Shown: positions 23,551 through 59,900 of the stretch, one piece after another | Layout of the letters: each line of letters opens with the position of its first letter | Position numbering within the stretch: position 1 is the first letter of the stretch | NCBI GenBank assembly: GCA_002269645.1 | Contig: NIVC01003283.1 | Location: forward strand, 40,569 to 104,568 | Direction of reading: 5' to 3' | Length of the DNA stretch: 64,000 bases | From: Macrostomum lignano | Lineage: Eukaryota | Notes under the pieces: generated by a model | The model's database searches: none | What the model saw: the letters and a program-made list of their open reading frames with translations, nothing else | Told to the model about the DNA's origin: nothing | Made by a program: the position numbers and the translations under genes

Positions 23551-26500
23551 GTCGCCAAAGGCCTGGCCTTCCTCAACCGCGACTGCCGCCTGCTCCACGG
23601 TCGCGTCGTGCAGCCTCCGTGTTTGTCAATAGCGCCGGCGAATGGAAACTGTGGGCCTTTCAGCACACCGCGCCGCTGGGAATCCGTCTGGCGCGGTGGC
23701 TTCGGCTGGTGTTGAACTGCCTGACATTTACCTGCCTGGCGATGCGGACAGGCTGGTTAAGGCTGCCGACCGGGAGACCATCGACTCCTGGGGACTGGGC
23801 TGCTTCGTCTGGGAGGTTGGTTGCTTCATCTGTATTGGTGTATGCAAACTTGACTGGGGGTTCTGCCTGTTTCTCCTGTTTTGGGGATTCTTGTTGTAAC
23901 AACAGATTCTTGTTATTTTGATGGGTGAGATTTTGAATGGATTCTTGTTATTGTGATGGGTGAGATTTTGAATGGATTCTTGTTACTGTGTAATGGGTGA
24001 GATTTTGAATGGATTCTTGTTATTGTGATGGGTGAGATTTTGAATGGATTCTTGTTACTGTGTAATGGGTGAGATTTTGAATGGATTCTTGTTATTGTGT
24101 AATGGGTGAGATTTTGAATGGATTCTTGTTATTGTGTAATGGGTGAGATTTTGAATGGATTCTTGTTATTGTGATGGGTGAGATTTTGAATAGATTTCAT
24201 CGTAATTTTCATACCGTTTGTGGGAGAAAAGTGGGTTTTAGCCTAGCGGTCAGAGCGTCGGACTCACGACTTGAACGTCGGGGGTTCGATTCCCGATCCC
24301 ACATGAACAATTTGTGTCCTTGAGCAAGACACTTAACTCTGCACTGCTTCAGTTCACTCAGCATTAGCTGGGGTAATTGGGGTCCAGTCCTTGGACTGAA
24401 CAGCCGTACGCAGCCCTCAGATGCGCTCCATTGGGGCAGGTGTAATCAACTATTTTTTATTATTATTATTACTATTGTAGGAAAATGAAATGATTTCTCC
24501 AATTACTCAACCTGTCAACAGGTGTTCAACAGGCCGCTGACCTCGCGCCAGGATCTGCGCCAGTGGCCACGTGCCGCAGGCGCTGCAGCCGGCTTACGCG
24601 AGCTCATCCGCGACCGGGCGGCCCAGCGCTGCCCTGCGGCAGACTTTCTGCAGCGCTGCTCCAAGCCCGGCGGGTTTTCGATAATCCTTACACCAGGGCG
24701 CTGCTGCAGCTGGAGCAGCTGCACGTGCTGGCTGCGGAGGAGAAATCTCAGTTTCTTGGCCAGCTGGCGGAGCAGGTGAGATGCCCAGATTCTCTGGCTG
24801 ACCCTGCTTTGCTGTTTTTATCGACTCTAGATTAACAGTATCACCTACCCAGGTCCTAGCATGCACCCCTACCATTCCAGATCTGCCCCTACCATCCCAG
24901 ATCCGCCCTATCATTTCAGATCTGCCCTATCATTCCAGATCTGCCCTACCATCCTAGATCCGCCCCTATCATTTCAGATCCGCCCCTACCATTCCAGATC
25001 TTCCCCTACCATCCCAGATCTGCACCTACCATCCCAGATCCACCCCTACCATCCCAGATCCCCCCTTATTCCAGATCCGCCCCTATCATTCTTGATCCGC
25101 CCCTACCATTCCAGATCTTCCTCTACCATTCCAGATCTGCACCTACCATCCCAGATCCGCCCCTATCATCCCAGATCCGCCCCTACCATCCCAGATCCGC
25201 CCCTATCATCCCAGATCCGCCCTATCATTCCAGATCCGCCCCTACCATTCCAGATCTGCACCTACCATCCCAGATCCGCCCCTACCATCCCAGATTTGCC
25301 CCTATCATCCCAGATCCGCCCCTATCATTCCAGATCTGCCCCTACCATCCCAGATGCGCCCCTACCATCCCAGATCCGCCCTACCATCCCAGATATGCCC
25401 CTACCATCCCAGATTCGCCCCTACCATCTCAGATCCGCCCTACCATCCCAGATGCGCCCTACCATCCCAGATCCGCCCCTACCAATCTCAGATCCGCCCC
25501 TACCATCCCAGATGCGCCCCTACCATCTCAGATCCGCCCCTATCATCCCAGATCCGCCCCTACCATCCCAGATCCGCCCCTACCATCTCAGATCCGCTCC
25601 TATCATCCCAGATCCGCCCCTACCAATCTCAGATCCGCCCCTACCATCCCAGATCCGCCCTATCATCCCAGATCCGCCCCTACCATCCCAGATGCGCCCC
25701 TACCATCCCAGATCCGCCCCTACTAAATAAGGCAAGCTCACTCCCAATCGCAGCTGTCCAACTTCCAGACGACGTGGCCAAGCACAAGGTGCTGCCCCAG
25801 CTAGTCAATATTCTTCAATACGGCGGCGGCGGCTCGGAAGTTCTGCTGCCTCTGCTGCGCCTATCCCGCCTGTGCGACAAATCGGAGTTCGAGGGCCGCA
25901 TCGTGCCCTGCCTGATTCGCCTGTTCTCCCTGCCCGAACGGGTCGCCCGAGTCCGCCTGCTTGAGCAGTTGCCGTCCTACATTGGCCACCTGCCCGACCG
26001 GGTGGTGAACGAGCAGATTCTGCAGCCGTTCTGCCAGGGATTCCACGACACCAGCCCAGTTGTTCGGGAGCACACTATCAGAGCCGCCGTTCACCTGGCC
26101 GAGAAGCTCAACGCTAAGAATCTCAACGAGGAATTGCCCAAGCATTTGACAAGGCTGCAGGTGAGCTTCTTTTGCAGTTTAGCGGCTCTTTTTTAGCTTT
26201 TCGTGTCATTAGGGAGTGTTCTTGCCATTCAAATTTCTTTCATTTCACCTTTCATTAAAAACCTTTAAATGCGTGTCTTCACCCTTCATCATCAGAGGCC
26301 TTACAAATGCCTGTCTTCACCCTTCATCATCAGAGGCCTTACAAATGCCTGTCTTCACCCTTCATCAGCAAAGGCCTTACAAATGCCTGTCTTCACCCTT
26401 CATCATCAGAGGCCTTACAAATGCCTGTCTTCACCCTTCATCATCAGAGGCCTTACAAATGCCTGTCTTCACCCTTCATCATCAGAGGCCTTACAAATGC

Positions 26501-29500
26501 CTGTCTTCACCCTTCATCATCAGAGGCCTTACAAATGCCTGTCTTCACCCTTCATCATCAGAGGCCTTACAAATGCCTGTCCTCACCCTTCATCATCAGA
26601 GGCCTTACAAATGCCTGTCTTCACCCTTCATCATCAAAGGCCTTACAAATGCCTGTCTTCACCCTTCATCATCAAAGGCCCTCAAATGCCTGTCTTCACC
26701 CTTCATCATCAGAGGCCCTCAAATGCCTGTCTTCACCCTTCATCAGCAAATGCCCTCAAATGTCTGTCTTCACCCTTCATCATCAGAGGCCTTACAAATG
26801 TCTGTCTTCACCCTTCATCAGCAAATGCCCTCAAATGCCTGTCTTCACCCTTCATCATCAGAGGCCTTAGAAATGCCTGACTTCACCCTTCATCATCAGA
26901 GGCCTTACAAATGCCTGTCTTCACCCTTCATCATCAAATGCCCTCAAATGCCTGACTTCACCCTTCATCATCAGAGGCCTTAGAAATGCCTGACTTCACC
27001 CTTCATCATCAGAGGCCTTACAAATGCCTGTCTTCACCCTTCATCATCAGAGGCCTTACAAATGCCTGTCTTCACCCTTCATCATCAGAGGCCTTACAAA
27101 TGCCTGTCTTCACCCTTCATCATCAAAGGCCTTAGAAATGCCTGACTTCACCCTTCATCATCAGAGGCCTTAAAAATGCCTGTCTTCACCCTTCATCATC
27201 AGAGGCCTTACAAATGCCTGTCTTCACCCTTCATCATCAGAGGCCTTACAAATGCCTGTCTTCACCCTTCATCATCAAAGGCCTTAAAAATGCCTGTCTT
27301 CACCCTTCATCATCAGAGGCCTTACAAATGCCTGTCTTCACCCTTCATCATCAGAGGCCTTACAAATGCCTGTCTTCACCCTTCATCATCAGAGGCCTTA
27401 CAAATGCCTGTCTTCACCCTTCATCATCAAAGGCCTTAAAAATGCCTGTCTTCACCCTTCATCATCAGAGGCCTTACAAATGCCTGTCTCACCCTTCATC
27501 ATCAGAGGCCTTACAAATGCCTGTCTTCACCCTTCATCATCAGAGGCCTTACAAATGCCTGTCTTCACCCTTCATCATCAGAGGCCTTACAAATGCCTGT
27601 CTTCACCCTTCATCATCAGAGGCCTTACAAATGCCTGTCTTCACCCTTCATCATCAGAGGCCTTACAAATGCCTGTCTTCACCCTTCATCATCAGAGGCC
27701 CTCAAATGCCTGTCTTCACCCTTCATCAGCAAATGCCCTCAAATGTCTGTCTTCACCCTTCATCATCAGAGGCCTTACAAATGTCTGTCTTCACCCTTCA
27801 TCAGCAAATGCCCTCAAATGCCTGTCTTCACCCTTCATCATCAGAGGCCTTAGAAATGCCTGACTTCACCCTTCATCATCAGAGGCCTTACAAATGCCTG
27901 TCTTCACCCTTCATCATCAAATGCCCTCAAATGCCTGACTTCACCCTTCATCATCAGAGGCCTTAGAAATGCCTGACTTCACCCTTCATCATCAGAGGCC
28001 TTACAAATGCCTGTCTTCACCCTTCATCATCAGAGGCCTTACAAATGCCTGTCTTCACCCTTCATCATCAGAGGCCTTACAAATGCCTGTCTTCACCCTT
28101 CATCATCAAAGGCCTTAGAAATGCCTGACTTCACCCTTCATCATCAGAGGCCTTAAAAATGCCTGTCTTCACCCTTCATCATCAGAGGCCTTACAAATGC
28201 CTGTCTTCACCCTTCATCATCAGAGGCCTTACAAATGCCTGTCTTCACCCTTCATCATCAAAGGGCTTAGAAATGCCTGACTTCACCCTTCATCATCAGA
28301 GGCCTTAAAAATGCCTGTCTTCACCCTTCATCATCAGAGGCCTTACAAATGCCTGTCTTCACCCTTCATCATCAGAGGCCTTACAAATGCCTGTCTTCAC
28401 CCTTCATCATCAAAGGCCTTAAAAATGCCTGTCTTCACCCTTCATCATCAAAGGCCTTAAAAATGCCTGTCTTCACCCTTCATCATCAGAGGCCTTACAA
28501 ATGCCTGTCTTCACCCTTCATCATCAGAGGCCTTACAAATGCCTGTCTTCACCCTTCATCATCAGAGGCCTTACAAATGCCTGTCTTCACCCTTCATCAT
28601 CAAAGGCCTTAAAAATGCCTGTCTTCACCCTTCATCATCAGAGGCCTTACAAATGCCTGTCTCCACCCTTCATCATCAGAGGCCTTACAAATGCCTGTCT
28701 TCACCCTTCATCATCAGAGGCCTTACAAATGCCTGTCTTCACCCTTCATCATCAGAGGCCTTACAAATGCCTGTCTTCACCCTTCATCATCAGAGGCCTT
28801 ACAAATGCCTGTCTTCACCCTTCATCATCAGAGGCCTTACAAATGCCTGTCTTCACCCTTCATCATCAGAGGCCTTACAAATGCCTGTCTTCACCCTTCA
28901 TCATCAAATGCCCTCAAATGCCTGACTTCACCCTTCATCATCAGAGGCCTTAGAAATGCCTGACTTCACCCTTCATCATCAGAGGCCTTACAAATGCCTG
29001 TCTTCACCCTTCATCATCAGAGGCCTTACAAATGCCTGTCTTCACCCTTCATCATCAGAGGCCTTACAAATGCCTGTCTTCACCCTTCATCATCAAAGGC
29101 TTAGAAATGCCTGACTTCACCCTTCATCATCAGAGGCCTTAAAAATGCCTGTCTTCACCCTTCATCATCAGAGGCCTTACAAATGCCTGTCTTCACCCTT
29201 CATCATCAGAGGCCTTACAAATGCCTGTCTTCACCTTTCATCATCAAAGGCCTTAAAATGCCTGTCTTCACCCTTCATCATCAGAGGCCTTACAAATGCC
29301 TGTCTTCACCCTTCATCATCAGAGGCCTTACAAATGCCTGTCTTCACCCTTCATCATCAGAGGCCTTACAAATGCCTGTCTTCACCCTTCATCATCAGAG
29401 GCCTTACAAATGCCTGTCTTCACCCTTCATCATCAAAGGCCTTAAAAATGCCTGTCTTCACCCTTCATCATCAGAGGCCTTACAAATGCCTGTCTCCACC

Positions 29501-31065
29501 CTTCATCATCAGAGGCCTTACAAATGCCTGTCTTCACCCTTCATCATCAAAGGCCTTAAAAATGCCTGTCTTCACCCTTCATCATCAGAGGCCTTACAAA
29601 TGCCTGTCTTCACCCTTCATCATCAGAGGCCTTACAAATGCCTGTCTTCACCTTCATCATCAGAGGCCTTACAAATGCCTGTCTTCACCCTTCATCATCA
29701 GAGGCCTTACAAATGCCTGTCTTCACCCTTCATCATCAAAGGCCTTACAAATGCCTGTCTTCACCCTTCATCATCAAAGGCCTTAAAAATGCCTGTCTTC
29801 ACCCTTCATCATCAAAGGCCTTAAAAATGTCTGTCTTCACCCTTCATCATCAGAGGCCTTACAAATGCCTGTCTTCACCCTTCATCATCAAAGGCCTTAC
29901 AAATGCCTGTCTTCACCCTTCATCATCAGAGGCCTTACAAATGCCTGTCTCCCCTGCAAATCAGGTCAAAGACGAGCAGGGCGGCGTGCGCGCCAACGCC
30001 ACCGTGTGCCTGGGCAAGCTGGCTGGCCACATGGCCCCGGCAACGAGGCAGGGCCCCCTGCTGGCCCAGTTCCTCAAATGCCTGCGCGACCCGTTCCCGC
30101 CGGCGAGACAGGCCGCCCTGCTAGCCTGCGCGTCTACCCTGTCATTCTACACACTGCGGGACACCGCCTGCCGCCTGCTGCCGGCCCTCTGCCCGCTGAC
30201 ACTGGACCCGAGCAAAGAGGTTCGCGAGCACGCGTTCCAAGCTATTAACGCCTGTCTGCAACGCCTGCGCAAAGCGTCGGACAGTCCAGAGGAGGCAGCG
30301 GATCTCGAGAGTCAAGTGGCCGCCACTAGAGGCGCGGATTCCACTAGCAAGTCTTGGGCCAACTGGGCCGTGTCCGCTCTGTCAGCCAAGTTCTACAAGA
30401 CCGCCCCGTCTGCGTCTGCTGCCGCCCCCGCTGCCGCTGTACCATCCGCTTCGGCACCTACTCCGGCATCTGCTACTGCCGAGCCTACTAACAGCAGTAG
30501 TATCAGCAAGCCATTGCCGCCTGTCGCTAATACAGCTTCCGCTGCCGCTGCTGCCAATGCGTCGGTAGTTGCGCCAGCCACCACCGACTGGAACGACGCC
30601 TGGAGCGACGCTGACGATGACGGTGATTGGGGCAGCATCGAGGAGGCTGGATCGTCGGCGATGGAGAAGCAATCGGCATCAGGGTTGGCTCCGAGCTCTT
30701 CTTCCTCCGCTGCTGCCAGCGCCTGGGACACCAACTGGGGCGACGAGGAGGACGACACCCAGAAGGAGCCGATCCAGTCGGCGGTGGAGCCGCCGCCAAT
30801 TCGTGCGGCATTGTCGTCGGCTGCAAAATCCGGCGGCGGTGGACTCAAGCTTACTGGCGCTAAAAAGTTGGCGCCGAAATTGGCGCCTAGCGCCGGTAGC
30901 AATCTGGACGCCATCCTATCTGAAGAGATGGCCAGGCAACAGCTGGCACCGCAAAAGCAGCAGCAGCAGCAGCAACAGCCGATCCGAAATCCACAGAAGG
31001 AACAGAAGCACAGAAGGCAGCAGAAGAAACCAAGTGACGATGAGGATGATTGGGGAGCCTGGTAA
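23551..31065 (+). CDS. SCYL1: SCY1-like pseudokinase 1 (NTKL), 5'-partial. Exons 23551-23815, 24522-24775, 25754-26160, 29965-31065, with small apparent deletions in the first three.
   Basis: VAKGLAFLNRDCRLLH, VFVNSAGEWKL, DSWGLGCFVWE|VFN, KHKVLPQL, GFHDTSPVVREHT, RLQ|VKDEQGGVRANATVCLGKL, RDPFPPAR, DPSKEVREHAF and an acidic tail ending DDEDDWGAW match SCYL1 as recalled. Confidence 0.93.
23915..24192 (+). repeat. 35-37-bp minisatellite, 8 copies, in SCYL1 intron
   Basis: Unit gggtgagattttgaatggattcttgttattgtgat. Confidence 0.95.
24231..24476 (+). mobile_element. tRNA-derived SINE with a Deu/Nin-like central domain and (TTA)n tail
   Basis: A box tagcctagcgg (24239-24249), B box ggttcgattcc (24283-24293), acceptor-stem pairing gtgggtt/atcccac and a CAC anticodon loop. 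These are followed by gtgtccttgagcaagacacttaactctgcactgcttcagttcactcagc and a ttattattattatt tail. Confidence 0.85.
24860..25722 (+). repeat. About 20-bp C-rich minisatellite in SCYL1 intron
   Basis: Unit cccagatccgcccctaccat with variants. Confidence 0.95.
26275..29950 (+). repeat. 38-bp satellite-like array (about 3.7 kb, about 95 copies) filling a SCYL1 intron
   Basis: Unit cttcacccttcatcatcagaggccttacaaatgcctgt. The array ends about 15 nt before the acceptor at 29964. Confidence 0.98.
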
Positions 31066-35180: not shown

Positions 35181-38631
<3,451 letters not shown>

Positions 38632-44088: not shown

Positions 44089-45279
44089 ATGAAGTGGCAG
44101 CTCGCTCTCGGATTTTTGCTGTGCGCAGCCCTGGCTGCCCAGGCCGCAAACTCCGGCAATCGTGAACAAGCTCAGGAGCACGAAAAGGAGCACGAGGAGA
44201 AGAGGGAGCTCGAGAAGGAGCGCGAAAAGGCGCACGAGGAGAAGAGGGAGCTCGAGAAGGAGCACGAAAAGGAGCGCGAGGAGCGCGAGGAACTCGAGAA
44301 GGAGCGCGAAAAGCAAGACGACGAGCACGAGGAGGTCGACCAGGAGCGCGAAGAGCTCGAAAAGGAGCGCGAAAAGGCGCACGAGGAGAAGAGGGAGCTC
44401 GAGAAGGAGCGTGAAAAGGAGCACGAGGAGCGCGAGGAGCTCGACAAGGAGCGCGAAAAGCAAGACGAGGAGCGTGAGGAGCTCGACAAGGAGCGCGAAA
44501 AGCAGGACGAGGAGCGCGAAGAACTCGACAAGGAGCGCGAAAAGGAGCACAAGGAGCGCGAAGAGGAGGACGAAGAAGAGCACAAGGACCACAAAGAAAA
44601 GCACAAAGAGCACGAGGAGCACGAGGAGCACGAGGAGCACGAGGAGCACGAGGAGCACGAGAAGCACAAGGTGAAGAAGGAGCTCGAGAAGGCTGAGGAG
44701 GAGCACGAGAAGCACAAGGTGAAGAAGGAGCTCGAGAAGGCTGAGAAGGAGCACGAGAAGCACAAGTTGAAGAAGGTGCTCGAGAAGGCTGAGGAGGAGC
44801 ACGAGAAGCACAAGGTGAAGAAGGAGCTCGAGAAGGCTGAGAAGGAGCACGAGAAGCACAAGTTGAAGAAGGTGCTCGAGAAGGCTGAGGAGGAGCACGA
44901 GAAGCACAAGGTGAAGAAGGAGCTCGAGAAGGCTGAGAAGGAGCACGAGAAGCACAAGTTGAAGAAGGTGCTCGAGAAGGCTGAGGAGGAGCACAAGGAG
45001 CGCAAGGAGCAGAGGGAGCTCGAGAAGGCCGAGAAGGCCGAGAAGGCCGAGAAGGAGCACAAGGAGCGCAAGGAGCAGAGGGAGCTCGAGAAGGCCGAGA
45101 AGGCCGAGAAGGCCGAGAAGGAGCACAAGGAGCGCAAGGAGCAGAGGGAGCTCGAGAAGGCCGAGAAGGAGCACGAGGAGCACAAGGAGGAGGTAGAAAA
45201 GCGCGATGCTATGCTGGAGGCTCTGGCCAACCTGGACAGTTTCAACATGCTGGAGGAGAGGGCCGAGAACCTCAACTAG
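44089..45279 (+). CDS. Intronless secreted Glu/Lys/His/Arg-rich low-complexity helical protein, 396 aa
   Basis: ATG in a good context (gcaaccATGa) and a signal-peptide-like N-terminus MKWQLALGFLLCAALAAQA. G/C-ending codons run throughout. The repeats are imperfect but stay in frame, and the C-terminus is unique (KRDAMLEALANLDSFNMLEERAENLN). A TATA lies upstream and AATAAA is at 45494-45499. Confidence 0.88.
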   Translation: MKWQLALGFLLCAALAAQAANSGNREQAQEHEKEHEEKRELEKEREKAHEEKRELEKEHEKEREEREELEKEREKQDDEHEEVDQEREELEKEREKAHEEKRELEKEREKEHEEREELDKEREKQDEEREELDKEREKQDEEREELDKEREKEHKEREEEDEEEHKDHKEKHKEHEEHEEHEEHEEHEEHEKHKVKKELEKAEEEHEKHKVKKELEKAEKEHEKHKLKKVLEKAEEEHEKHKVKKELEKAEKEHEKHKLKKVLEKAEEEHEKHKVKKELEKAEKEHEKHKLKKVLEKAEEEHKERKEQRELEKAEKAEKAEKEHKERKEQRELEKAEKAEKAEKEHKERKEQRELEKAEKEHEEHKEEVEKRDAMLEALANLDSFNMLEERAENLN

Positions 45280-48132: not shown

Positions 48133-50368
48133 TCAGGCAGGTGCAGGCGAGGCAATTTTTTGCCAAATGTTTTGGCGCAAAGTCACCACTGGGGGCGTAG
48201 TTATACCATAGACAAGTGTCTAATGAACATTCACCCATTCTTGCAATGGTGTCTGTGGCATTCACCCATTCTTGCAATGGTGTCTGTGTCATTCACCCAT
48301 TCTTGCAATGGTGTCCGTGGCATTCACCCATTCTTGCAATGGTGTCTGTGGCATTCACCCATTCTTACAATGGTGTCTAATGAACATTCACCCATTCTTG
48401 CAATGGTGTCCGTGGCATTCACCCATTCTTGCAATGGTGTCTGTGGCATTCACCCATTCTTGCAATGGTGTCTGTGGCATTCACCCATTCTTGCAATGGT
48501 GTCTGTGGCATTCACCCATTCTTGCAATGGTGTCTAATGAACATTCACCCATTCTTGCAATGGTGTCTAATGAACATTCACCCATTCTTGCAATGGTGTC
48601 CGTGGCATTCACCCATTCTTGCAATGGTGTCTGTGGCATTCACCCATTCTTGCAATGGTGTCTGTGTCATTCACCCATTCTTGCAATGGTGTCCGTGGCA
48701 TTCACCCATTCTTGCAATGGTGTCTGTGGCATTCACCCATTCTTGCAATGGTGTCTGTGGCATTCACCCATTCTTGCAATGGTGTCTGTGGCATTCACCC
48801 ATTCTTGCAATGGTGTCCGTGGCATTCACCCATTCTTGCAATGGTGTCCGTGGCATTCACCCATTCTTGCAATGGTTATTTCAGCCAGTTCTGAAGGCCG
48901 TTGCTCATGATCGGAACCACCAATTTGGCAAAAGTGACTTCAATTTTGGCCAGCCCATCGACAAAACGTTAATTTACCTTTCGGCAATGTCTATGGTAAC
49001 TGTGGCAGAATCAGATAAAAGCCTAAAACAATCACTGTTACTGATTCAATGATCTAAATTTCATTGATGAAGTCACTGAAAAAAACATTTTCTTTTGTCC
49101 TCACGTTGCTTCAAAGCAACGCTAGCTTCAGTGACAAATCTGTGAATGATCGCCTCGGCCTTGGTTCTCTTCATGTCAGTCGTCTCCAGTCTCTTCTTTC
49201 TTGGATGCTGCGCATCAATCCGTTCTCCATCCTTCAGACCGCCACTCCAGGCCTCTGGTCCTGGGCCTCCTTGGACAAGCGCAGGGTTGGTTTGAATTTT
49301 TAATTAGCCGAGCGGCTCGGTGTGAGATGACAAACGAATTCTGTCACGAGAGAATTTCAAAAAACAGAAATCTAGTTCAAAATCTTTTTGCTTCATTGAA
49401 TTGTCTTGAAATGACGGAATTTGCTTCCAAGAGTTGGAAACTGACCGGATTAAAGGGGTGATTGTTATTTTGATCTGAGTCGGGATGCAGTAAGAGTGGG
49501 GATCTATAGAGATTAATGATTCCGGGATCCACTAGGATTTAGCATCAGTAATCAAATAGAAATAGAGTCTATATCAATTAGGATCCGTTAGGATTAGAGT
49601 GGTTAGGCATTAAGATTGGAGTTGGGACTCATTAAGAGTATAATACTGGTTTCAACTTTTATTGCGAACTATTGTATCAATAACTTCTATTGTATCCAGT
49701 AAGTTCCTATTTTAGCTTTTACTAGCATACTATATTCAGATGATAAATCTTCATTGCGAGATACTAGCTCGTATAAATATGAATTCACACTCTTAATTGT
49801 TTTATAGTGACAAGAGTACCTGACTTCGACAGTAACGGTGTCACAGTGTATTACATCACGCTTGTATCAATTCAATACGTAGACGGCAGCGCCAAATTAA
49901 ATTGCCTTCTTTGAGGAAAGAGATGATGATTTTTTGGACAGCTACAAGTTGAATTTGTGCCGGTTAAACGTTTCAAACATCTCTGTCTTCTAAGCTGTTT
50001 CGTTCGACATTTCTAATATATAAACAAAGTAATAATGTATACCTACAAACAATGCATTGCTACGCAGGATACCAGAAATGAAAGCGAAAATGCAGTTAAA
50101 TGATTATATTCTAACACTTCATACCATCTTGAAAGTACGGGTACAATGTAAAACCACATTTGCAAGCCATAGGGTTTAAAAACATAGCTTACTTGCTGCG
50201 ACAATTTCTTAATCTAGCGTAGGTTCTTTTACCCCTTTTAGTCCAATCAGGAGCTTTGGAAGCGATATTTGCGATTGGTTCGACTACTACCTGAGCAGCG
50301 AGTTGAAGTTCGCTGACAGACTCACCTAAGTTGAGAAGCAGTTTACTAACTGTTAACTCCTGGCACAT
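48133..50368 (-). CDS. Tentative small 5-exon gene of unknown function (about 120 aa). Exons 50368-50326, 49269-49105, 48999-48978, 48937-48861, 48188-48133.
   Basis: Phase-consistent GT-AG joins give MCQELTVSKLLLNLGGPGPEAWSGG...KKRLETTDMKRTKAEAIIHRFVTEASVALKQ... Exon 2 is GC-rich with a GTGAG donor, and a minisatellite starts exactly at the exon 4 donor. No homology was recognised, and splice sites were hand-picked. Confidence 0.35.
48215..48875 (+). repeat. 31-bp minisatellite, about 21 copies
   Basis: Unit ggcattcacccattcttgcaatggtgtctgt. Confidence 0.97.
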
Positions 50369-50448
50369 TGTGGCAGCGCTTAAACGGCGAGCATCTCGAA
50401 ATTCGTCTGGAACCGCTTGGAGCTCGCGAATTTTAGCAGCTGCCCATC

Positions 50449-51027
50449 ATGCGCCCGCTAATCTCTTGCTGGCTCTTTGTAGCCGCTCTTTGTCTGACCG
50501 CCGTTGCCGTCAGCAACGCGAACTCCAACCTGGATGAAGACGATGACTACATTGGAGTAGCTCCTGAGCATGAGCAGCTCCGATACAACTCAAAAGGCCT
50601 CCGTAGAGATCTTCGTAAGTGGCAGTACAACGGCGGCATGTTCGGAAAACGGCAGTACAACGGCGGCATGTTCGGAAAGCGGCAGTACAACGGCGGCATG
50701 TTCGGAAAGCGGCAGTACAACGGCGGCATGTTCGGAAAACGGCAGTACAACGGCGGCATGTTCGGAAAACGGCAGTACAACAGCGGCATGTTCGGAAAAC
50801 GGCAGTACAACGGCGGCATGTTCGGAAAACGGCAGTACAACGGCGGCATGTTCGGAAAACGGCAGTACAACGGCGGCATGTTCGGAAAACGGCAGTACAA
50901 CGGCGGCATGTTCGGAAAACGGCAGTACAACGGCGGCATGTTCGGAAAACGGCAGTATAACGGCGGCATGTTCGGAAAACGGCAGTACAACGGCGGCATG
51001 TTCGGAAAACGGCAGTACGAAGAGTAA
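50449..51027 (+). CDS. Neuropeptide precursor, 192 aa, with 13 tandem amidated peptides of the QYNGGMF-amide type
   Basis: Signal-peptide-like MRPLISCWLFVAALCLTAVAVS, an acidic spacer, then 13 units of QYN(G/S)GMF-G-KR (30 nt each, 50623-51012). G-KR is the canonical amidation plus convertase cleavage signal. Confidence 0.93.
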   Translation: MRPLISCWLFVAALCLTAVAVSNANSNLDEDDDYIGVAPEHEQLRYNSKGLRRDLRKWQYNGGMFGKRQYNGGMFGKRQYNGGMFGKRQYNGGMFGKRQYNGGMFGKRQYNSGMFGKRQYNGGMFGKRQYNGGMFGKRQYNGGMFGKRQYNGGMFGKRQYNGGMFGKRQYNGGMFGKRQYNGGMFGKRQYEE

Positions 51028-51764
51028 ACTTTAAAGAGACGCGAACAGATAAAAATCTTATAATTCCATTAGCTACCGCTTGCGGTGAGCCGCATCAATG
51101 CGATGACCTGCGATTCAGCGGGACATTCCATGTGCTTGTTGTGCAATACCCTCGGCCTCTAACTTATTTCTTGGAAAATGACACTTCGATCTCTCTGAGA
51201 GAATAAGTAAAAAAGTGTTCAAGCACGATGTTCACAATCAAAAGCTAACACAATAAAAAAATCAAAATCTTTTGATTGAAGACAAAGCTTGCACCGAAGC
51301 GTACGTGGTTTGTGTGTTCCTAAAACTCAATGTTCATTCATCAAGTCACTTGACTTTTCTTAAGGTTTGAATCTTGAGCCATCTTCGCTGAAAACATTTG
51401 GGAATAGTTCTCTATTCTCAAGTTACATAGTACACTCAGCAACATGATAAAGTTTTTCACACCGAAACCAGTAGTCAAAATTTTCTCAGATCTACCCCAA
51501 GTGAGCAACTTACAACCACGCCCGCGGTTCTGGTCTCAACTGTAGCTGAGTGATGCAGGTTGCGTCACAAGGCCGTAGCTTAGGCTGGTGAGGAGAGAGT
51601 GGAGAGTTTTGGCTAGAGTTGAATTAATGTGCCGCTTGATGACCACTGGTTTCGGAAAGGAAACTTTTGCATGTTGCTGAATGTAGATCCTCTATCCTCT
51701 AGATGTAAATATACATCCTCTACCCCTTTTAAATGTGCATCCTTTCCAATCCTATGTGCACATT

Positions 51765-52100
51765 CTCTACCCCTCCAAATGTACATCCTCTCCCGCCCTA
51801 GTGCGAATTCTCTACCCCTCCAAATGTACATCCTCTCCCGCCCTAGTGCGAATTCTCTACCCCTCCAAATGTACATCCTCTCCCGCCCTAGTGCGAATTC
51901 TCTACCCCTCCAAATGTACATCCTCTCCCGCCCTAGTGCGAATTCTCTACCCCTCCAAATGTACATCCTCTCCCGTCCAAAGTGCGCATTCGCTACCCCT
52001 CCTAAATGTACATCCTCTCCCGTCCTAAGTGCGCATTCGCTACCCCTCCTAAATGTACATTCACTCCCGTTATAAGTGTACATTCTCTACCCCTCCTTAG
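51765..52100 (+). repeat. 45-bp minisatellite, about 7 copies
   Basis: Unit ctctacccctccaaatgtacatcctctcccgccctagtgcgaatt. Confidence 0.93.
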
Positions 52101-53164
52101 TGTATATACTCTATCCCCTCCGACTAAATTCTCTAGCCCTAAAAAGTACATAAAAGCCGAATACGAGTATAGGGTGATATCATGCTACAAACGAACCATA
52201 AACCATTCTATACAAGAACTTCATCTGCAGTATCTGCGACAAGTTAAGAAGCCACTGACAGTTCTTTTAAGCCTAGGCAAGCTAACGCACTCAATAGCCA
52301 AAGTCCACACAAGTCTAAATTTAAAGCCCACCCTCGCTGCTAAAGAGCCGTCCATTTATATTCAAACAGCAGCTGAAACTCCCCGGGGGACTGGAGCCGG
52401 CAACAAGAAAAACTTGATGGCCCATGAATTAAGCAACAGTATGTATAGTGCTGCAGCCTGTAGTGCTTAGAGCGGCACCCAGATGGACGGCAACTTGCTA
52501 TAAAACGGATCGTCTCGCATTGTTGACTTAGGAACTTTCCACTCGCTCGCTCACTAATTCATGCAGCCGGTTTTCTCACTTTCACTCTCGCCTCCGATTA
52601 ACCTGGGTGAGCCATGATATAATTATGGGAATATAAACTTGTGGCTGAGCCAGTATCGACCCTGCATGGCAACCGCCTTTCAGCAGCCCCAGAGGGCAGC
52701 TCTCAAGCAGTTTACTCGGTGCGTCACACCCACGCTTCGATGCCAGATTTCTTCCTCGTTCGCAGAAAGAAACGCGAAATTTTATAAGTTTTGCCCAAAG
52801 TCATGCGCGCACGCGATTGGAGACTGAAATTGGCCATTAAAAACATGAAATAGCTAAAAAAATTGCAGGAAACTTCGGCAGCGACTGCAGAGCGTAGTTT
52901 GGTTCTAATGAGAAAAACAGCACGTATCAGGCAAACGAATGCAGGGCCAGGAGCTCACGTGACTCGGTGGAGTAGCCTTGACTTACAGTTGCTTACTGTG
53001 CGGGAAGTGAGGACCGGGGACAAGTCTTATGGGGTTTCATCGTAGGGCGATTGTCTGTGATCAACAGGGCCAGCTTGAAGATTCTTATACATGCACATGC
53101 ATCCGTGAGGAGGGAAGTTATAATGGCGGAAGAGCGGTTTTAGGCAATGCGACATCAAAAACGG

Positions 53165-53305
53165 CGATTGTTCAGGGGATTGGGAGGGCGATTGTTCAGG
53201 GAATCAGGAGGGGCATTGTTCAGGGATCGGGAGGGCCATTAGGCAGGTTCAGGGCATTGGGAGGGTGATTGTTCAGGGGATCGGGAGGGCGATTGGTCAG
53301 GGGAT
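53165..53305 (+). repeat. About 24-bp degenerate G-rich tandem repeat, 5-6 copies
   Basis: Unit approximately gattgttcaggggatcgggagggc. Confidence 0.75.
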
Positions 53306-56904: not shown

Positions 56905-59900
56905 TTATTCCTTTTTCAGCCGCAGCCGCTCGTTGATAATCTTGCACCGCTGGGCGCACTCGTCCGCGCTGCGGGAGCCCACGGCCGCAGCCACCTGATC
57001 CCAGCGCTCCTTCGTACCTTTGGGAAATTGTCTGAGCGCCGCCTCCAGCTTAGACTGCTCAGCCTGACTCCAGGCCCGAGTCCGCTGCTGAGCTTCATCT
57101 ATATCGTCTTCTTCTGCTTTAACGGTTACGCCTCTCTGCTGCTGCTTCTGGCGCTTATTTCGACGCCTTCGCTGCGCCCTGCCGGCGCCGCCATCCGAAT
57201 CGGCGTCGCTGTCAGAGTCCGATTCGCCGCACACCGCTGCCCCATCGGTGTTGACTTCGAAAGCGGCGTTGAGGCTGGCGGCAGCCTGGCGCCGCATCTG
57301 CTGCTCGGCCTCGCGAGCCCGGGCGGCCACGTCCGGCACGGCGCGATGCAGCAGGGCGGCGATTTTCTCCCAGCGGCCGGGCGTGCCGCTGGGGAATCTG
57401 GCAACTGCCTTGACCAGAAGCTGCTGCTCCGCCTCGCTCCAGGGACCCTCGACTAGAGCCGGCGGAGTCGTTGATTCCGCCTGGTCGCCGTTGCTGACGG
57501 CGGCTTTGACTGGCGGAGTCGGCAACGGCTGCTGCTGTTCTGCCAGCAATTGCTGCTGCACCTGGGCCAGTTGCTGCTCCCGGCGCTCGCGTTTCTGCTG
57601 CTTTCTCTGCTCCCGCCTGCGGGCCTCCTCGGCTGCGGCTTCCGCTTCCGCTTTGGCCGCCCGCTTCCGTTGCAGTTCGGCGTCGCGCCAATCGGCCAGG
57701 CTGTCCAGCGCCCAGCGGCAGGCGCCTGGCGCGCCAACAGCGCAGGCGTAGAGGCCGCGACCGATGGCCAACGGCAGGAGGTCCCGCCAGCCTGGGCCCA
57801 CTAGCGGCTCCTGTTCCAGCTCTTCTTCCAGTTGTTTCTGCTTTTTCTTGCTCTTCCGCCGGAATAGATCGTCGAATGCTAGTTTCCTTTCAATGTAGAC
57901 ACCCCACAGGACTAAATAGTGGCCGACTGTGAACGCCAAGCAGAACACCAGCATCACTTCCGCTAAGCTCATCTTGCGCCACTTCCGGTAATAAAACATC
58001 GGGGTGCGCCAGTCGGGCAGCCCATTGTCAAGGATCTCGTCGTACCTGGCCAGGGTAGAGGGCAGATGGGGAGGTTCAGACTCGATTCTCGGTTCTCGTG
58101 ATTGAAAAAAAAACTTTGAATCAGGCCTAGGAGTGATTCTTGGTTCCCGGGCGGTTCTTGATTTTGGTTACCAGCCTTTCTTGAAAATTAGCCAACCCCA
58201 CAACAGAGTGTACATGCCTGACGATGTACACCCTGTGTGAGCGTGTGCATGAGTGCGTGCACCGTTTGCAGGATGGTGTTGCCGAAGGCACTGCGCCAGG
58301 CTGCCCACAACCCAATTGCAAGTATTATTAGTAGGAGTTATTCTGAGAATATCTTATGAAAATTCATTTTCGGAATTGACACCGCCGAGATACTTGCGAG
58401 CTGGGCGGATCCCACCTGAGCGCTCGCAATAAGGTATCATTACTTTAGGCATGAGAAATTTCCAAACGCGTCACAAAATGGGGAATTGAAGTATTCGATA
58501 AAAAAGTACTTTTTCACCTGCTGGGATCAAAGCATAAAATTTGATGGACTTTTAACTTGATTAAAAGCTATTAACCGATTAAAAGGCATGTCATGTGCGT
58601 TACAATCAATATAATCACATAAAAGTTTTTAGCTTGTCTAGACACTTATATAGGACAATCGATAAATAAAAAATGGGGAAACACAAATGCTTGAAAGTAG
58701 ACGATTATAATTGTATGCGTAGCTAATAACTAGATATTAGGAATGGGCTATTGCGAGCGTAAACAATCCAATTAGAATCGCCGATGACACCCATTAAGAA
58801 TCGCCCACGACACAATGAGGAATCGCCCATGACACCATGAGGAATCGCCCATGACACCATGAGGAATCGCCCATGACACAAAGGAATCGCCCATGACACC
58901 ATGAGGAATCACCCATGACACCATGAGAAATCGCCCATGACACCATGAGGAATCACCCATGACACCATGAGAAATCGCCCATGACACCATGAGGAATCGC
59001 CCATGACACCATGACGTATCGCCCATGACACCATGAGGTATCGCCCATGACACCCATGAGGTATCGCCCATGACACAATAAGGAATCGCCCATGACACAA
59101 TAAGGAATCACCCATGACACCATGAGGAATCACCCATGACACCATGAGAAATCGCCCATGACACCATGAGGAATCCGCCCATGACACAATAAGGAATCGC
59201 CCATGACACCATGAGGTATCGCCCATGACACAATAAGGAATCGCCCATGACACCATGAGGTATCGCCCATGACACCCATGAGGTATCGCCCATGACACCC
59301 ATGAGGAATCGCCCATGACACCATGAGAAATCGCCCATGACACCCATGAGGAATCGCCCATGACACCCATGAGGAATCGCCCATGACACCCATTAGGAAT
59401 CGCCCATGACACCCATGAGGAATCGCCCATGACACCCATGAGGAATCGCCCATGACACCATGACGTATCGCCCATGACACCCATTAGGAATCGCCTATGA
59501 CACCATTAGGAATCGCCCATGACACCATTAGGAATCGCCCATGACACCATGAGGAATCGCCCATGACACCATGAGGAATCGCCCATGACACCCATGACAC
59601 CATGAGGAATTGCCCATGACACCCATGACACCATGAGGAATTGCCCATGACACCCATGAGGAATCGCCCATGACACCCATGACACCATGAGGAATTGCCC
59701 ATGACACCCATGACACCATGAGGAATTGCCCATGACACCCATGACACCATGAGGAATTGCCCATGACACCCATGACACCATGAGGAATTGCCCATGACAC
59801 CCATGAGGAATCGCCCATGACACCATAAGACATCGCCCATGACACTATAAGGACTCGATGCCATTAAATCAAACGCACCTCCGCCTCAGAGTTTCATCCT

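What the first reader, a model, noticed from the sequence alone, without database searches (positions are those of the whole stretch)
50449..51027. Multi-copy neuropeptide precursor encoding an unfamiliar pQYNGGMF-amide
Seen: 13 units. The first follows RK and would yield WQYNGGMFamide, eleven would yield QYNGGMFamide and the sixth QYNSGMFamide. The units are nearly identical at the DNA level (only aaa/aag, tac/tat and one ggc/agc change), implying recent expansion or concerted evolution. Established: G-KR gives C-terminal amidation and N-terminal Gln cyclises to pyroglutamate, so both ends would be protected. Inference: I cannot assign it to a known family. It is not an RFamide. Tyr six residues from the amidated Phe loosely recalls sulfakinin/gastrin spacing, but the multi-copy architecture does not. 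It may be a new peptide-receptor system.
Basis: partly seen in the sequence, partly recalled or inferred. Interest (0 to 1): 0.76.

Follow-up and report, generated by a model that had tools for sequence, protein, structure and literature searches.

The report
Flatworm multicopy SIFamide-like neuropeptide precursor
This is a real, transcript-annotated gene of the flatworm Macrostomum lignano encoding 13 copies of a small amidated peptide (pQYNGGMF-NH2); the peptide is unnamed in databases but is not an orphan, because it closely matches the nematode NLP-10/SIFP-1 and arthropod SIFamide peptides.

Summary
ORF 50449-51027 (+) encodes 192 aa: a signal peptide, an acidic spacer, then 13 ten-residue units (1x WQYNGGMF-GKR, 11x QYNGGMF-GKR, 1x QYNSGMF-GKR).

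The window is Macrostomum lignano contig NIVC01003283.1. 34% of it is minisatellite, so a tandem array alone means little. This array is different:
- It is the only one of 37 with a G-K-R site in every unit inside an ORF that starts with a signal peptide.
- It is a called gene in an RNA-seq-derived annotation.
- M. lignano has an unlinked paralogue (BOX15_Mlig004279, about 31x FNGGMF-GKR) that shares only the peptide core. All 4 consensus codon differences in that core are synonymous.

An exhaustive HMMER search hit hookworm NLP-10. C. elegans NLP-10 (AIPFNGGMYamide) is the ligand of the NPFF/SIFamide-type receptor NPR-35. Arthropod SIFamide ends in FNGSIFamide. The shared motif is [FY]-N-G-[GS]-[MI]-[FY]-NH2. 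The sulfakinin idea fails.

Caveats: trochozoan SIFamide/FFamide precursors look different, a relation to AstA/buccalin (FNGGLamide) is possible, and no receptor or expression data could be obtained. The verdict is a new member of a known kind, of moderate interest.

The parts
50432..50437 (+). ttttag, a splice-acceptor-like motif 11 nt upstream of the ATG. It could be a cis or SL trans-splice acceptor. Speculative.
   Evidence: Sequence read directly. 38.8% of M. lignano genes are trans-spliced (PMC5730564). Not tested.
50449..51027 (+). Complete single-exon CDS of the prepropeptide (192 aa plus stop).
   Evidence: ORF. It is a called gene with exactly this product on two contigs of GCA_002269645.1. 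The called genes are the transcript-based GenBank models: the neighbouring DnaJ/Myb gene is a multi-exon model, and none of the many minisatellite ORFs is called.
50449..50520 (+). Predicted signal peptide MRPLISCWLFVAALCLTAVAVSNA (n-region Arg2, about 19-residue hydrophobic core, small residues at -3/-1: S-N-A|N).
   Evidence: Mean Kyte-Doolittle hydropathy of residues 3-21 is +2.28, against -1.57 for the spacer. 11 of 12 residues are hydrophobic in the best window. The cleavage site is inferred from the -3/-1 rule, because no SignalP was available.
50521..50619 (+). Acidic spacer propeptide NSNLDEDDDYIGVAPEHEQLRYNSKGLRRDLRK, ending in the RK cleavage site. It contains an internal RR.
   Evidence: Translation. 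Acidic spacers are typical of neuropeptide precursors (established knowledge).
50620..51012 (+). Peptide array: Trp58, then 13 x 30-nt units (Q-Y-N-G/S-G-M-F plus G-K-R). Predicted products are 1x WQYNGGMF-NH2, 11x (p)QYNGGMF-NH2 and 1x (p)QYNSGMF-NH2.
   Evidence: Each unit ends in Gly-Lys-Arg, which is the amidation donor plus a dibasic site. Variants: 2 synonymous types and 1 Gly>Ser.
51013..51027 (+). Degenerate truncated 14th unit QYEE plus the TAA stop.
51252..51257 (+). AATAAA, the first canonical poly(A)-signal-like hexamer, 224 nt after the stop (putative 3'UTR end).
   Evidence: Function inferred, not tested.

Best explanation
The ORF is the prepropeptide of a multicopy amidated neuropeptide of Macrostomum lignano. 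Its best family candidate is the protostome SIFamide / NLP-10 (SIFP-1) family, which is the orthologue group of vertebrate NPFF.

Proposed mechanism:
1. The N-terminal signal peptide takes the protein into the secretory pathway.
2. A PC2-type convertase cuts after RK57 and after each KR.
3. A carboxypeptidase trims the basic residues.
4. Peptidylglycine alpha-amidating enzymes convert the exposed Gly into a C-terminal amide.
5. N-terminal Gln cyclises to pyroglutamate.

One precursor molecule therefore yields 11 pQYNGGMF-NH2, 1 pQYNSGMF-NH2 and 1 WQYNGGMF-NH2. The peptides are released from peptidergic cells and most likely signal through a rhodopsin-beta GPCR of the NPFF/SIFamide type.

Shown here: the ORF, the signal-peptide-like N-terminus, the regular GKR sites, annotation as a transcript-based gene, a paralogue with protein-level conservation of the core, and similarity to NLP-10/SIFamide.

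Inferred: every processing step, neuronal expression and the receptor.
For: (1) Anatomy: as listed under parts.

(2) Transcription: the ORF is a called gene on both homeologous contigs. The GenBank annotation of Mlig_3_7 comes from an RNA-seq genome-guided transcriptome from which non-coding and repeat-overlapping transcripts were removed (PMC5730564).

(3) Selection on the peptide:
- An exhaustive phmmer search of 1.84 billion representatives found a M. lignano paralogue, P0001 = BOX15_Mlig004279 (E 8e-9).
- Its genomic array is 27 bp x 31, encoding FNGGMFGKR.
- The two genes share no blastn HSP, even across the arrays, and no blastp HSP in the non-repeat parts.
- The core NGGMFGKR is identical, and all 4 consensus nucleotide differences are synonymous third positions (S = 5.33 and N = 18.67 sites; chance that all four are synonymous is about 0.002).
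- Within the paralogue array, variation is concentrated at one Gly third position, with A/G/T in 7/5/16 units.

(4) Family:
- The same search hit Ancylostoma ceylanicum EYC05570.1 (E 8.4e-5), which contains AAIPFSGGMY, identical to C. elegans NLP-10-3.
- The NLP-10 peptides are AIPFNGGMY, STMPFSGGMY and AAIPFSGGMY (PMC11532408 supplement).
- NLP-10 = SIFP-1 activates NPR-35 = SIFR-1, an NPFF/SIFamide-family receptor, in vitro and in vivo (PMC7615250, PMC11532408, PMC11004728).
- Arthropod SIFamide is (G/T)YRKPPFNGSIFamide.
- C-terminally anchored BLOSUM62 scores over 6 residues are 24-32 against C. elegans NLP-10 (unit 6 variant: 18-23) and 22-25 against SIFamide (variant: 16). All other families score 12 or less.
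- SIFamide-type GPCRs are 'generally present in lophotrochozoans' (PMC8557429) and have been reported in a monogenean flatworm (PMC9645230).
- NLP-10 precursors are also multicopy and follow a spacer (P0003).
Against: - Flatworms are spiralians. The SIFamide-type precursors of other spiralians (annelids, molluscs, nemerteans) are different: two peptides directly after the signal peptide (...LLFamide...NMNSLFFamide) and a Cys-containing tail. Their peptides score only -1 to 11 against the M. lignano peptides. Homology would therefore require trochozoan divergence or a nematode-like multicopy reorganisation.
- Six-residue similarity can arise by convergence.
- The phmmer E-value to NLP-10 is inflated by repeats and shared GKR processing sites. 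An unrelated-looking Plectus ...GMMFGKR precursor scored similarly.
- No expression pattern, mass-spectrometry or receptor evidence was obtainable.
- The two-copy comparison gives no extra evidence of constraint. The CDS is 579/579 identical, but so is the whole 3.1-kb block 50050-53212 except for one base.
- The flatworm catalogues of McVeigh 2009 and Koziol 2016 could not be read, so a prior description cannot be excluded.
Confidence: 0.5

Rival explanations
1. It is a genuine neuropeptide precursor, but a lineage-restricted flatworm multicopy peptide (MCP). Its similarity to NLP-10/SIFamide is convergent, and it signals through some other receptor, such as a flatworm-specific orphan rhodopsin GPCR or a peptide-gated DEG/ENaC channel.
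For: - Clade- or species-restricted MCPs are very common in neuropeptidome surveys (PMC6188537; PMC8557429).
- No relative outside M. lignano and nematodes reached E<=1e-3 among 1.84 billion representatives.
- The planarian prohormone set has no GMFG, GGMF or YNGG strings.
- Trochozoan SIFamide-type peptides are dissimilar.
- Flatworms have large orphan rhodopsin families (PMC6114109).
Against: A 5/6 identity (FNGGMF against FNGGMY), plus amidation and a multicopy-after-spacer architecture shared with NLP-10, is a lot to attribute to chance. The same Asn at position -5, small residues at -4/-3, a hydrophobic residue at -2 and an aromatic amide at -1 recur in arthropod SIFamide.
Confidence: 0.24
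2. It is a derived allatostatin-A/buccalin-type precursor. Spiralian AstA/buccalin genes are highly multicopy with units ...[FY]-[NSTG]-G-G-L-GKR. The M. lignano unit would be a C-terminally extended variant (FNGG-L to FNGG-M-F) acting on an AstA/galanin-type receptor.
For: Nemertean AstA precursors carry ...RFNGGLGKR...MMYSGGLGKK and similar units in up to about 30 copies (PMC8557429 supplement). These share the F-N-G-G string and the multicopy architecture. McVeigh et al. 2009 reportedly found buccalin-like peptides in flatworms (from memory of the abstract; the paper was not readable).
Against: - The amidated C-terminus is the key determinant in this family (...GLamide). Here the peptide ends ...MFamide.
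- C-terminally anchored scores are -5 to 4.
- No AstA/buccalin precursor reached significance in the exhaustive search, whereas NLP-10 did.
Confidence: 0.1
3. It is a secreted multicopy peptide precursor that is not neuronal, for example an antimicrobial, gland, adhesive or seminal-fluid peptide processed by furin-like enzymes.
For: Expression site is unknown. Multicopy dibasic-flanked precursors also exist for antimicrobial peptides, and some nematode 'NLP' genes are epidermal antimicrobials (established knowledge, from memory). A neighbouring gene (44089-45279) is also a secreted repeat protein.
Against: The peptide is short (7 residues), uncharged, carries an obligatory amidation signal, and matches a deorphanised neuropeptide family. 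It has no cationic or amphipathic character expected of antimicrobial peptides.
Confidence: 0.08
4. It is a CCK/sulfakinin-type peptide, the first reader's loose suggestion based on Tyr lying six residues from the amidated Phe.
For: Tyr is at -6 and Met at -2 relative to the Phe-amide, as in ...YGHMRFamide (sequence from memory).
Against: - There is no acidic residue next to Tyr for tyrosylprotein sulfotransferase.
- There is no RFamide, DFamide or GGGR[FW]amide ending.
- There are 13 copies instead of 1-3.
- Tyr is replaced by Phe in the paralogue.
- Anchored scores are 3-8 (sulfakinin) and -4 to -2 (CCK8).
Confidence: 0.02
5. It is a non-functional minisatellite that happens to be open, with the gene model an annotation artefact.
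For: 34% of the window is tandem repeat, many arrays have open frames, and the array is 98% homogeneous.
Against: - The ORF starts 172 nt upstream in unique sequence with a signal peptide, has GKR in every unit, and stops immediately after the array.
- It was annotated from transcripts, while none of the other 35 arrays was.
- An unlinked paralogue conserves the peptide with only synonymous core differences.
Confidence: 0.03

Closest known systems
Nematode NLP-10 / SIFP-1 (C. elegans AIPFNGGMYamide, STMPFSGGMYamide, AAIPFSGGMYamide; ligand of NPR-35/SIFR-1)
   Same: - The C-terminal hexapeptide matches almost residue for residue: FNGGMY against FNGGMF in the paralogue (5/6) and YNGGMF in the window gene (4/6, the rest conservative).
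- Each unit ends in Gly-Lys-Arg, so both are amidated.
- Both are multicopy precursors with the units after a signal peptide and an acidic spacer (P0003).
- It is the only non-M. lignano family found by exhaustive HMMER.
   Different: - Nematode peptides carry an N-terminal extension with a conserved Pro (xxPF...). The M. lignano peptides are only 6-7 residues and start with pGlu or Phe.
- The terminal residue is Phe, not Tyr.
- There are 13 (about 31 in the paralogue) near-identical copies against 4-8 diverged ones.
- Nematodes are ecdysozoans and M. lignano is a spiralian, so orthology is unproven.
Arthropod SIFamide ((A/G/T)YRKPPFNGSIFamide)
   Same: - The C-terminal motif is F-N-G-S-I-F-NH2 against [FY]-N-G-G-M-F-NH2. 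Asn at -5, Gly at -4 and Phe-amide are identical, and Ser/Gly and Ile/Met are conservative.
- It belongs to the NPFF/SIFamide receptor system, which is present in lophotrochozoans.
   Different: The SIFamide precursor has a single 12-residue peptide directly after the signal peptide and a C-terminal Cys-containing associated peptide. Here there are 13 copies after a spacer, and no Cys beyond the signal peptide.
Trochozoan SIFamide/FFamide precursors (Platynereis SIFamide-1/2, mollusc FFamide, nemertean SIFa/FF peptide)
   Same: Phylogenetically these are the expected relatives, being spiralians. The peptides are amidated and end in Phe, with Asn at -5 in ...NMNSLFFamide.
   Different: - They have a two-peptide architecture immediately after the signal peptide plus a Cys tail.
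- Peptide similarity is low: anchored scores -1 to 11.
- This is the main argument against simple orthology.
Spiralian allatostatin-A / buccalin precursors (...RFNGGLamide, ...YSGGLamide)
   Same: They are highly multicopy with dibasic-flanked amidated units and share the internal F-N-G-G string.
   Different: They end in Gly-Leu-amide. The M. lignano peptide has Met-Phe-amide, which is one residue longer at the pharmacophoric end. They gave no significant hit in the HMMER search.

Membership tests
Multicopy amidated neuropeptide precursor (generic kind) | N-terminal signal peptide | tested here: met
   The N-terminus is hydrophobic (KD +2.28 over residues 3-21), with Arg2 and S-N-A at -3..-1. 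This is a heuristic test only, because no SignalP was available.
Multicopy amidated neuropeptide precursor (generic kind) | Repeated short peptides, each flanked by dibasic cleavage sites, with C-terminal Gly as amide donor | tested here: met
   All 13 units end in G-K-R, and the first is preceded by R-K.
Multicopy amidated neuropeptide precursor (generic kind) | Gene is transcribed | tested here: met
   Indirect. It is a called gene on two contigs of an annotation built from RNA-seq transcripts. No read-level data were seen.
Multicopy amidated neuropeptide precursor (generic kind) | Expression in neurons or endocrine cells, and detection of the mature peptide | not testable with these tools
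   No expression atlas or peptidomics for M. lignano was accessible.
SIFamide / NLP-10 (SIFP-1) / NPFF family | C-terminal motif of the protostome members: aromatic-Asn/Ser-Gly-Gly/Ser-Ile/Met-aromatic-amide | tested here: met
   YNGGMF and FNGGMF were compared with FNGGMY (NLP-10-1; 4/6 and 5/6 identical) and FNGSIF (SIFamide; 3/6 and 4/6). These gave the highest scores of 19 peptides compared.
SIFamide / NLP-10 (SIFP-1) / NPFF family | Canonical arthropod/trochozoan precursor architecture: one or two peptides directly after the signal peptide, plus a Cys-containing C-terminal peptide | tested here: not met
   There are 13 copies after a 33-residue spacer, and no Cys after the signal peptide. 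The accepted nematode member NLP-10 also lacks this architecture, so it is not universal to the family.
SIFamide / NLP-10 (SIFP-1) / NPFF family | Statistically significant precursor similarity to a family member | tested here: inconclusive
   phmmer gave E 8.4e-5 to A. ceylanicum NLP-10 in a library of 1.84 billion proteins. The score rests on repeated short units that include the generic GKR site.
SIFamide / NLP-10 (SIFP-1) / NPFF family | Peptide activates an NPFF/SIFamide-clade GPCR. This feature actually defines the family. | not testable with these tools
   It needs receptor cloning and a cell-based assay.
SIFamide / NLP-10 (SIFP-1) / NPFF family | An NPFF/SIFamide-clade receptor is encoded in the M. 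lignano genome | not tested
   Literature only: the receptors are 'generally present in lophotrochozoans' and present in one monogenean. No M. lignano proteome search with a tree was run.
Allatostatin-A / buccalin | C-terminal [FY]-x-[FG]-G-[LI]-amide | tested here: not met
   The peptide ends G-M-F-amide. Anchored scores are -5 to 4. Only the internal FNGG string is shared.
CCK / sulfakinin | Sulfatable Tyr in an acidic context, a C-terminal ...M-R-F / W-M-D-F / G-G-G-R-[FW] amide, and 1-3 copies | tested here: not met
   Tyr is flanked by Gln and Asn. The ending is G-M-F-amide. There are 13 copies. Tyr is replaced by Phe in the paralogue.

The most novel reading that the evidence does not exclude
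pQYNGGMFamide and FNGGMFamide are the ligands of a flatworm-restricted signalling system, for example one of the orphan platyhelminth-specific rhodopsin GPCRs or a peptide-gated DEG/ENaC channel. The near-identity to nematode NLP-10 would then be convergence. This would be a new peptide-receptor pair in a transgenic-tractable flatworm, and a possible lead for orphan receptors shared with parasitic flatworms.
Probability: 0.22. Interest if true: 0.6.

Novelty: new member of a known kind. Interest (0 to 1): 0.45.

Why it matters
If the assignment holds, this gene and its paralogue would be the first flatworm SIFamide/NLP-10-type ligands that I could find in the searchable literature.

The near-identity of a spiralian peptide (FNGGMFamide) to ecdysozoan peptides (FNGGMYamide, FNGSIFamide) would point to an ancestral protostome peptide of the form F-N-G-[GS]-[IM]-[FY]-amide. 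The trochozoan FFamides would then be the derived form.

It also gives a concrete, cheap hypothesis to test: two synthetic peptides, one receptor clade and defined masses. M. lignano has transgenesis and RNAi, and in C. elegans this system controls locomotion speed, feeding and aversive responses. SIFamide/NPFF-type receptors are reported in parasitic flatworms, so a validated ligand template could help deorphanise those drug-target candidates.

If the assignment fails, the gene is one more lineage-specific multicopy peptide, which is routine.

Tried and rejected
1. The search for homologous proteins with the full precursor and with an 88-aa N-terminal query found nothing, not even the M. lignano paralogue. 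The word index seems blind to these repeats. The exhaustive HMMER search was what worked.

2. I hoped the comparison of the two homeologous copies (L001 vs L002) would show purifying selection. I rejected it as evidence because the identical block spans 3.1 kb of mostly non-coding DNA, including another minisatellite.

3. Within-array dN/dS is not usable, with only 3 variant types.

4. Pfam gave no family for the precursor, and Rfam gave nothing in the window.

5. Literature string searches for YNGGMF, GGMFamide, MFamide with flatworm, and FNGGMY/GGMYamide found nothing relevant in main texts. The planarian prohormone supplement has no GMFG, GGMF, YNGG, GGLGK or FFGKR strings.

6. McVeigh et al. 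2009 (PMC2749192 / PMID 19361512) is not held. Koziol et al. 2016 has no PMC id in the reference list I saw, so I did not try to fetch it.

7. Contig look-ups for P0003 and P0004 found nothing on record. Their organisms came from cluster names instead.

8. Opioid-like reading (YGGFM against YNGGMF): rejected. The N-terminus is blocked or extended, the order of residues differs, the peptide is amidated, and the score is low.

9. I ran no further search on an oyster SIFamide receptor query (sequence obtained). Any M. lignano hits would be buried under trochozoan and arthropod receptors, and orthology would still need a phylogeny.
Full report
**1. What is there.** Window 50449-51027 (+) is an ATG-initiated ORF of 192 codons. 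A 30-bp tandem array of 13.3 copies with 98% matches spans 50621-51018. After the sequence ...RRDLRK-W come 13 units of Q-Y-N-G-G-M-F-G-K-R. Unit 6 has GGC>AGC (Gly>Ser), units 2 and 3 have AAA>AAG, and unit 12 has TAC>TAT. A degenerate QYEE-stop follows. The N-terminus MRPLISCWLFVAALCLTAVAVSNA has the layout of a signal peptide: Arg2, a hydrophobic core with mean hydropathy +2.28, and small residues at -3/-1. An acidic spacer follows it. AATAAA lies 224 nt after the stop.

**2. Where it comes from.** The exact protein is a called gene on two contigs of GCA_002269645.1 (NIVC01003283.1, which is this window, and NIVC01001785.1). The literature identifies NIVC00000000 / GCA_002269645 / Mlig_3_7 as the genome of the free-living flatworm Macrostomum lignano. 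Neighbouring genes in the window are CFAP58, a UBE2Q-like E2, a SCYL1-like HEAT protein, a secreted Glu/Lys/His-rich repeat protein and a DnaJ/Myb (DNAJC-type) gene.

**3. Is it more than another minisatellite?** This question had to be asked. The window contains 37 non-overlapping tandem arrays covering 34% of its bases, many with periods divisible by three and open frames. The paper describing the genome reports that simple and tandem repeats make up 15% of the assembly. Four things set this array apart.
- (a) Only two arrays lie in an ORF that begins upstream in unique sequence with a strongly hydrophobic N-terminus, and both are annotated genes. Only this one has G-[KR]-[KR] in every unit.
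- (b) The 'called genes' returned for the locus are the GenBank models. The neighbouring DnaJ gene is a 480-aa product spread over 3.3 kb, and none of the numerous minisatellite ORFs is called. That annotation was built from RNA-seq-guided transcripts after non-coding and repeat-overlapping transcripts were removed (PMC5730564). The gene is therefore transcribed, although I saw no read-level data.
- (c) An exhaustive phmmer search of 1.84 billion representative proteins with the N-terminus plus three units found a second M. lignano gene, BOX15_Mlig004279 (P0001, E 8e-9). It lies on other contigs.
- (d) That paralogue has a 27-bp x 31 array encoding F-N-G-G-M-F-G-K-R. The two genes share no blastn HSP, even across the arrays, and no blastp HSP in their non-repeat parts. 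Yet the core N-G-G-M-F-G-K-R is identical, and all four consensus nucleotide differences are synonymous third positions (5.33 synonymous against 18.67 non-synonymous sites; about 0.002 by chance). Inside the paralogue array, variation is concentrated at a single Gly third position.

This pattern is protein-level purifying selection on the peptide, not a spreading DNA repeat.

**4. A test that did not work.** The two homeologous copies of the window gene are 579/579 identical. However, the identical block runs from 50050 to 53212 with a single difference, and it includes non-coding DNA and a 45-bp minisatellite. The 1 kb upstream has 19 differences. This comparison therefore says nothing specific about the CDS.

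**5. Mechanism.** From established knowledge of prohormone processing, the product enters the secretory pathway and is cut at RK/KR by a PC2-type convertase. Collins et al. 2010 used pc2 RNAi in their peptidomic analysis of planarians (supplement list). The basic residues are trimmed, Gly is converted to an amide, and Gln cyclises. One molecule gives 11 pQYNGGMF-NH2, one pQYNSGMF-NH2 and one WQYNGGMF-NH2. All processing steps are inferred. In the paralogue the Gln is absent and the Tyr is Phe, so the conserved pharmacophore is [FY]-N-G-G-M-F-NH2, not the pGlu or the Tyr.

**6. Comparison with known families.**
- The HMMER search also hit a hookworm protein (Ancylostoma ceylanicum EYC05570.1, E 8.4e-5) with units such as AAIPFSGGMYGKR. 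That string is identical to C. elegans NLP-10-3.
- The C. elegans NLP-10 peptides are AIPFNGGMY, STMPFSGGMY and AAIPFSGGMY (PMC11532408 supplement).
- NLP-10 has been renamed SIFP-1. It is the ligand of NPR-35/SIFR-1, a member of the NPFF/SIFamide receptor family, as shown in vitro (PMC7615250) and in vivo (PMC11532408). The review is PMC11004728.
- Arthropod SIFamide is (G/T)YRKPPFNGSIFamide.

Anchoring comparisons at the amidated C-terminus, the M. lignano peptides score 24-32 against C. elegans NLP-10 and 22-25 against SIFamide, with 4-5 of 6 and 3-4 of 6 residues identical; the single QYNSGMF variant scores lower (18-23 and 16). Every other family scores 12 or less, including sulfakinin (3-8) and CCK-8 (-4 to -2). 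The shared motif is [FY]-[NS]-G-[GS]-[MI]-[FY]-NH2. Like the M. lignano genes, nematode NLP-10 precursors are multicopy and follow a spacer. SIFamide-type receptors are reported as generally present in lophotrochozoans (PMC8557429) and in a monogenean flatworm (PMC9645230).

**7. Why I stop at 'candidate member'.**
- The SIFamide-type precursors of other spiralians (Platynereis, molluscs, nemerteans) have two peptides (...LLFamide...NMNSLFFamide) directly after the signal peptide and a Cys-containing tail. Their peptides resemble the M. lignano peptide only weakly.
- Spiralian allatostatin-A/buccalin precursors are multicopy and contain ...RFNGGLGKR. A derived AstA-type origin, with one extra C-terminal residue, therefore cannot be excluded, although the C-terminus does not fit.
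- The HMMER E-value is inflated by repeats and the generic GKR site. A Plectus ...GMMFGKR precursor scored similarly.
- The family is defined by its receptor, which I could not test.

**8. Novelty.** The peptide strings occur in no searchable full text. They are absent from the planarian prohormone catalogue. They are also absent from the stored part of the large neuropeptide compilation in the Thiel et al. supplement, where the only M. lignano entry is an NPY-like precursor. The paralogue is named 'hypothetical protein' in NCBI and 'Uncharacterized protein' in UniProt; the window protein's own names are masked by the tool. Two subscription-journal flatworm catalogues could not be consulted (McVeigh 2009 is not held; Koziol 2016 was not available to me by PMC id), so prior description cannot be ruled out. 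Lineage-restricted multicopy peptides are routinely found in such surveys. This is a new member of a known kind, made more interesting by its close match to the ecdysozoan SIFamide/NLP-10 peptides.

**9. Verdict.**
- Observation: confirmed.
- Interpretation: partly supported. The precursor reading is right, the 'no known family / new system' reading is probably wrong, and the sulfakinin reading is wrong.

| Claim | My probability |
|---|---|
| Real secreted multicopy peptide precursor | about 0.9 |
| Neuropeptide | about 0.75 |
| SIFamide/NLP-10-type signalling | about 0.5 |

Interest 0.45.

Noticed in passing
L005 3001-4045 and L006 3001-3965 (M. lignano contigs NIVC01001722.1 and NIVC01000162.1): The paralogue BOX15_Mlig004279 is annotated as a 114-aa protein with 5 FNGGMF units and an 'intron'. 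The genomic array has 31 units (28 in L006). Two units (one in L006) are 26 nt long, with GGGG instead of GGGGG/GGTGG, and this shifts the frame. They look like homopolymer assembly errors that the gene model skips, so the true product probably has about 30 copies. Real pseudogenising frameshifts cannot be excluded.
   Followed up: partly
window 44089-45279 (+): This is an annotated gene (380-aa product) for a secreted protein. It has a signal peptide (MKWQLALGFLLCAALAAQA) followed by highly charged Glu/Lys/His-rich coiled-coil-like repeats (EKEREK..., HEEHEEHEE, KVKKELEKAEEEHEKH). It has no Pfam family above threshold, and its function is unknown.
   Followed up: partly
window 48994-53297 vs L001: Divergence between the two homeologous contigs is very patchy. 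There are 19 differences in 48994-50049, one difference in 50050-53212, then 15 differences within 53213-53297. The 31-bp array at 48228-48876 differs by more than 1 kb in length between the copies. This suggests gene conversion or mosaic assembly in this neopolyploid genome.
   Followed up: partly
window, whole (e.g. 26267-29950, 37332-38409): Tandem-repeat load is extreme: 37 arrays cover 34% of the window. They include a 38-bp x 97 array (3.7 kb) lying between coding ORFs of the SCYL1-like gene (presumably intronic) and a 1.1-kb (CTGT)n tract. Many arrays give long spurious ORFs in several frames, which is a trap for ORF-based reading of this genome.
   Followed up: partly
P0004 (UniProt A0A914W1R3, Plectus sambesii): An uncharacterised nematode multicopy precursor encodes ELPGMMFamide and ...DMGMMFamide peptides. 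It is another ...MFamide family, with no name that I could find. Its relation to NLP-10 or to the M. lignano peptides is unknown.
   Followed up: no
window 50557-50601 (residues 37-51 of the precursor): The spacer segment ...APEHEQLRYNSKGLRR... contains R-Y-N-S-x-G-L-R-R. It loosely resembles a degenerate unit (compare KR-Q-Y-N-S-G-M-F-G-KR) and may be a decayed ancestral copy. This is weak and unquantified.
   Followed up: no
window 1-1905 (-), 13953-14489 (-), 25354-31065 (+), 56905-57999 (-): Neighbouring genes are ordinary housekeeping genes: CFAP58 coiled-coil exons (Pfam E 2.9e-91), a UBE2Q-like E2 exon, a SCYL1-like HEAT-repeat protein with a low-complexity Ala/Ser/Gln-rich tail, and a DnaJ plus double Myb/SANT protein (DNAJC1/2-like). 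There is no sign of a neuropeptide gene cluster.
   Followed up: partly
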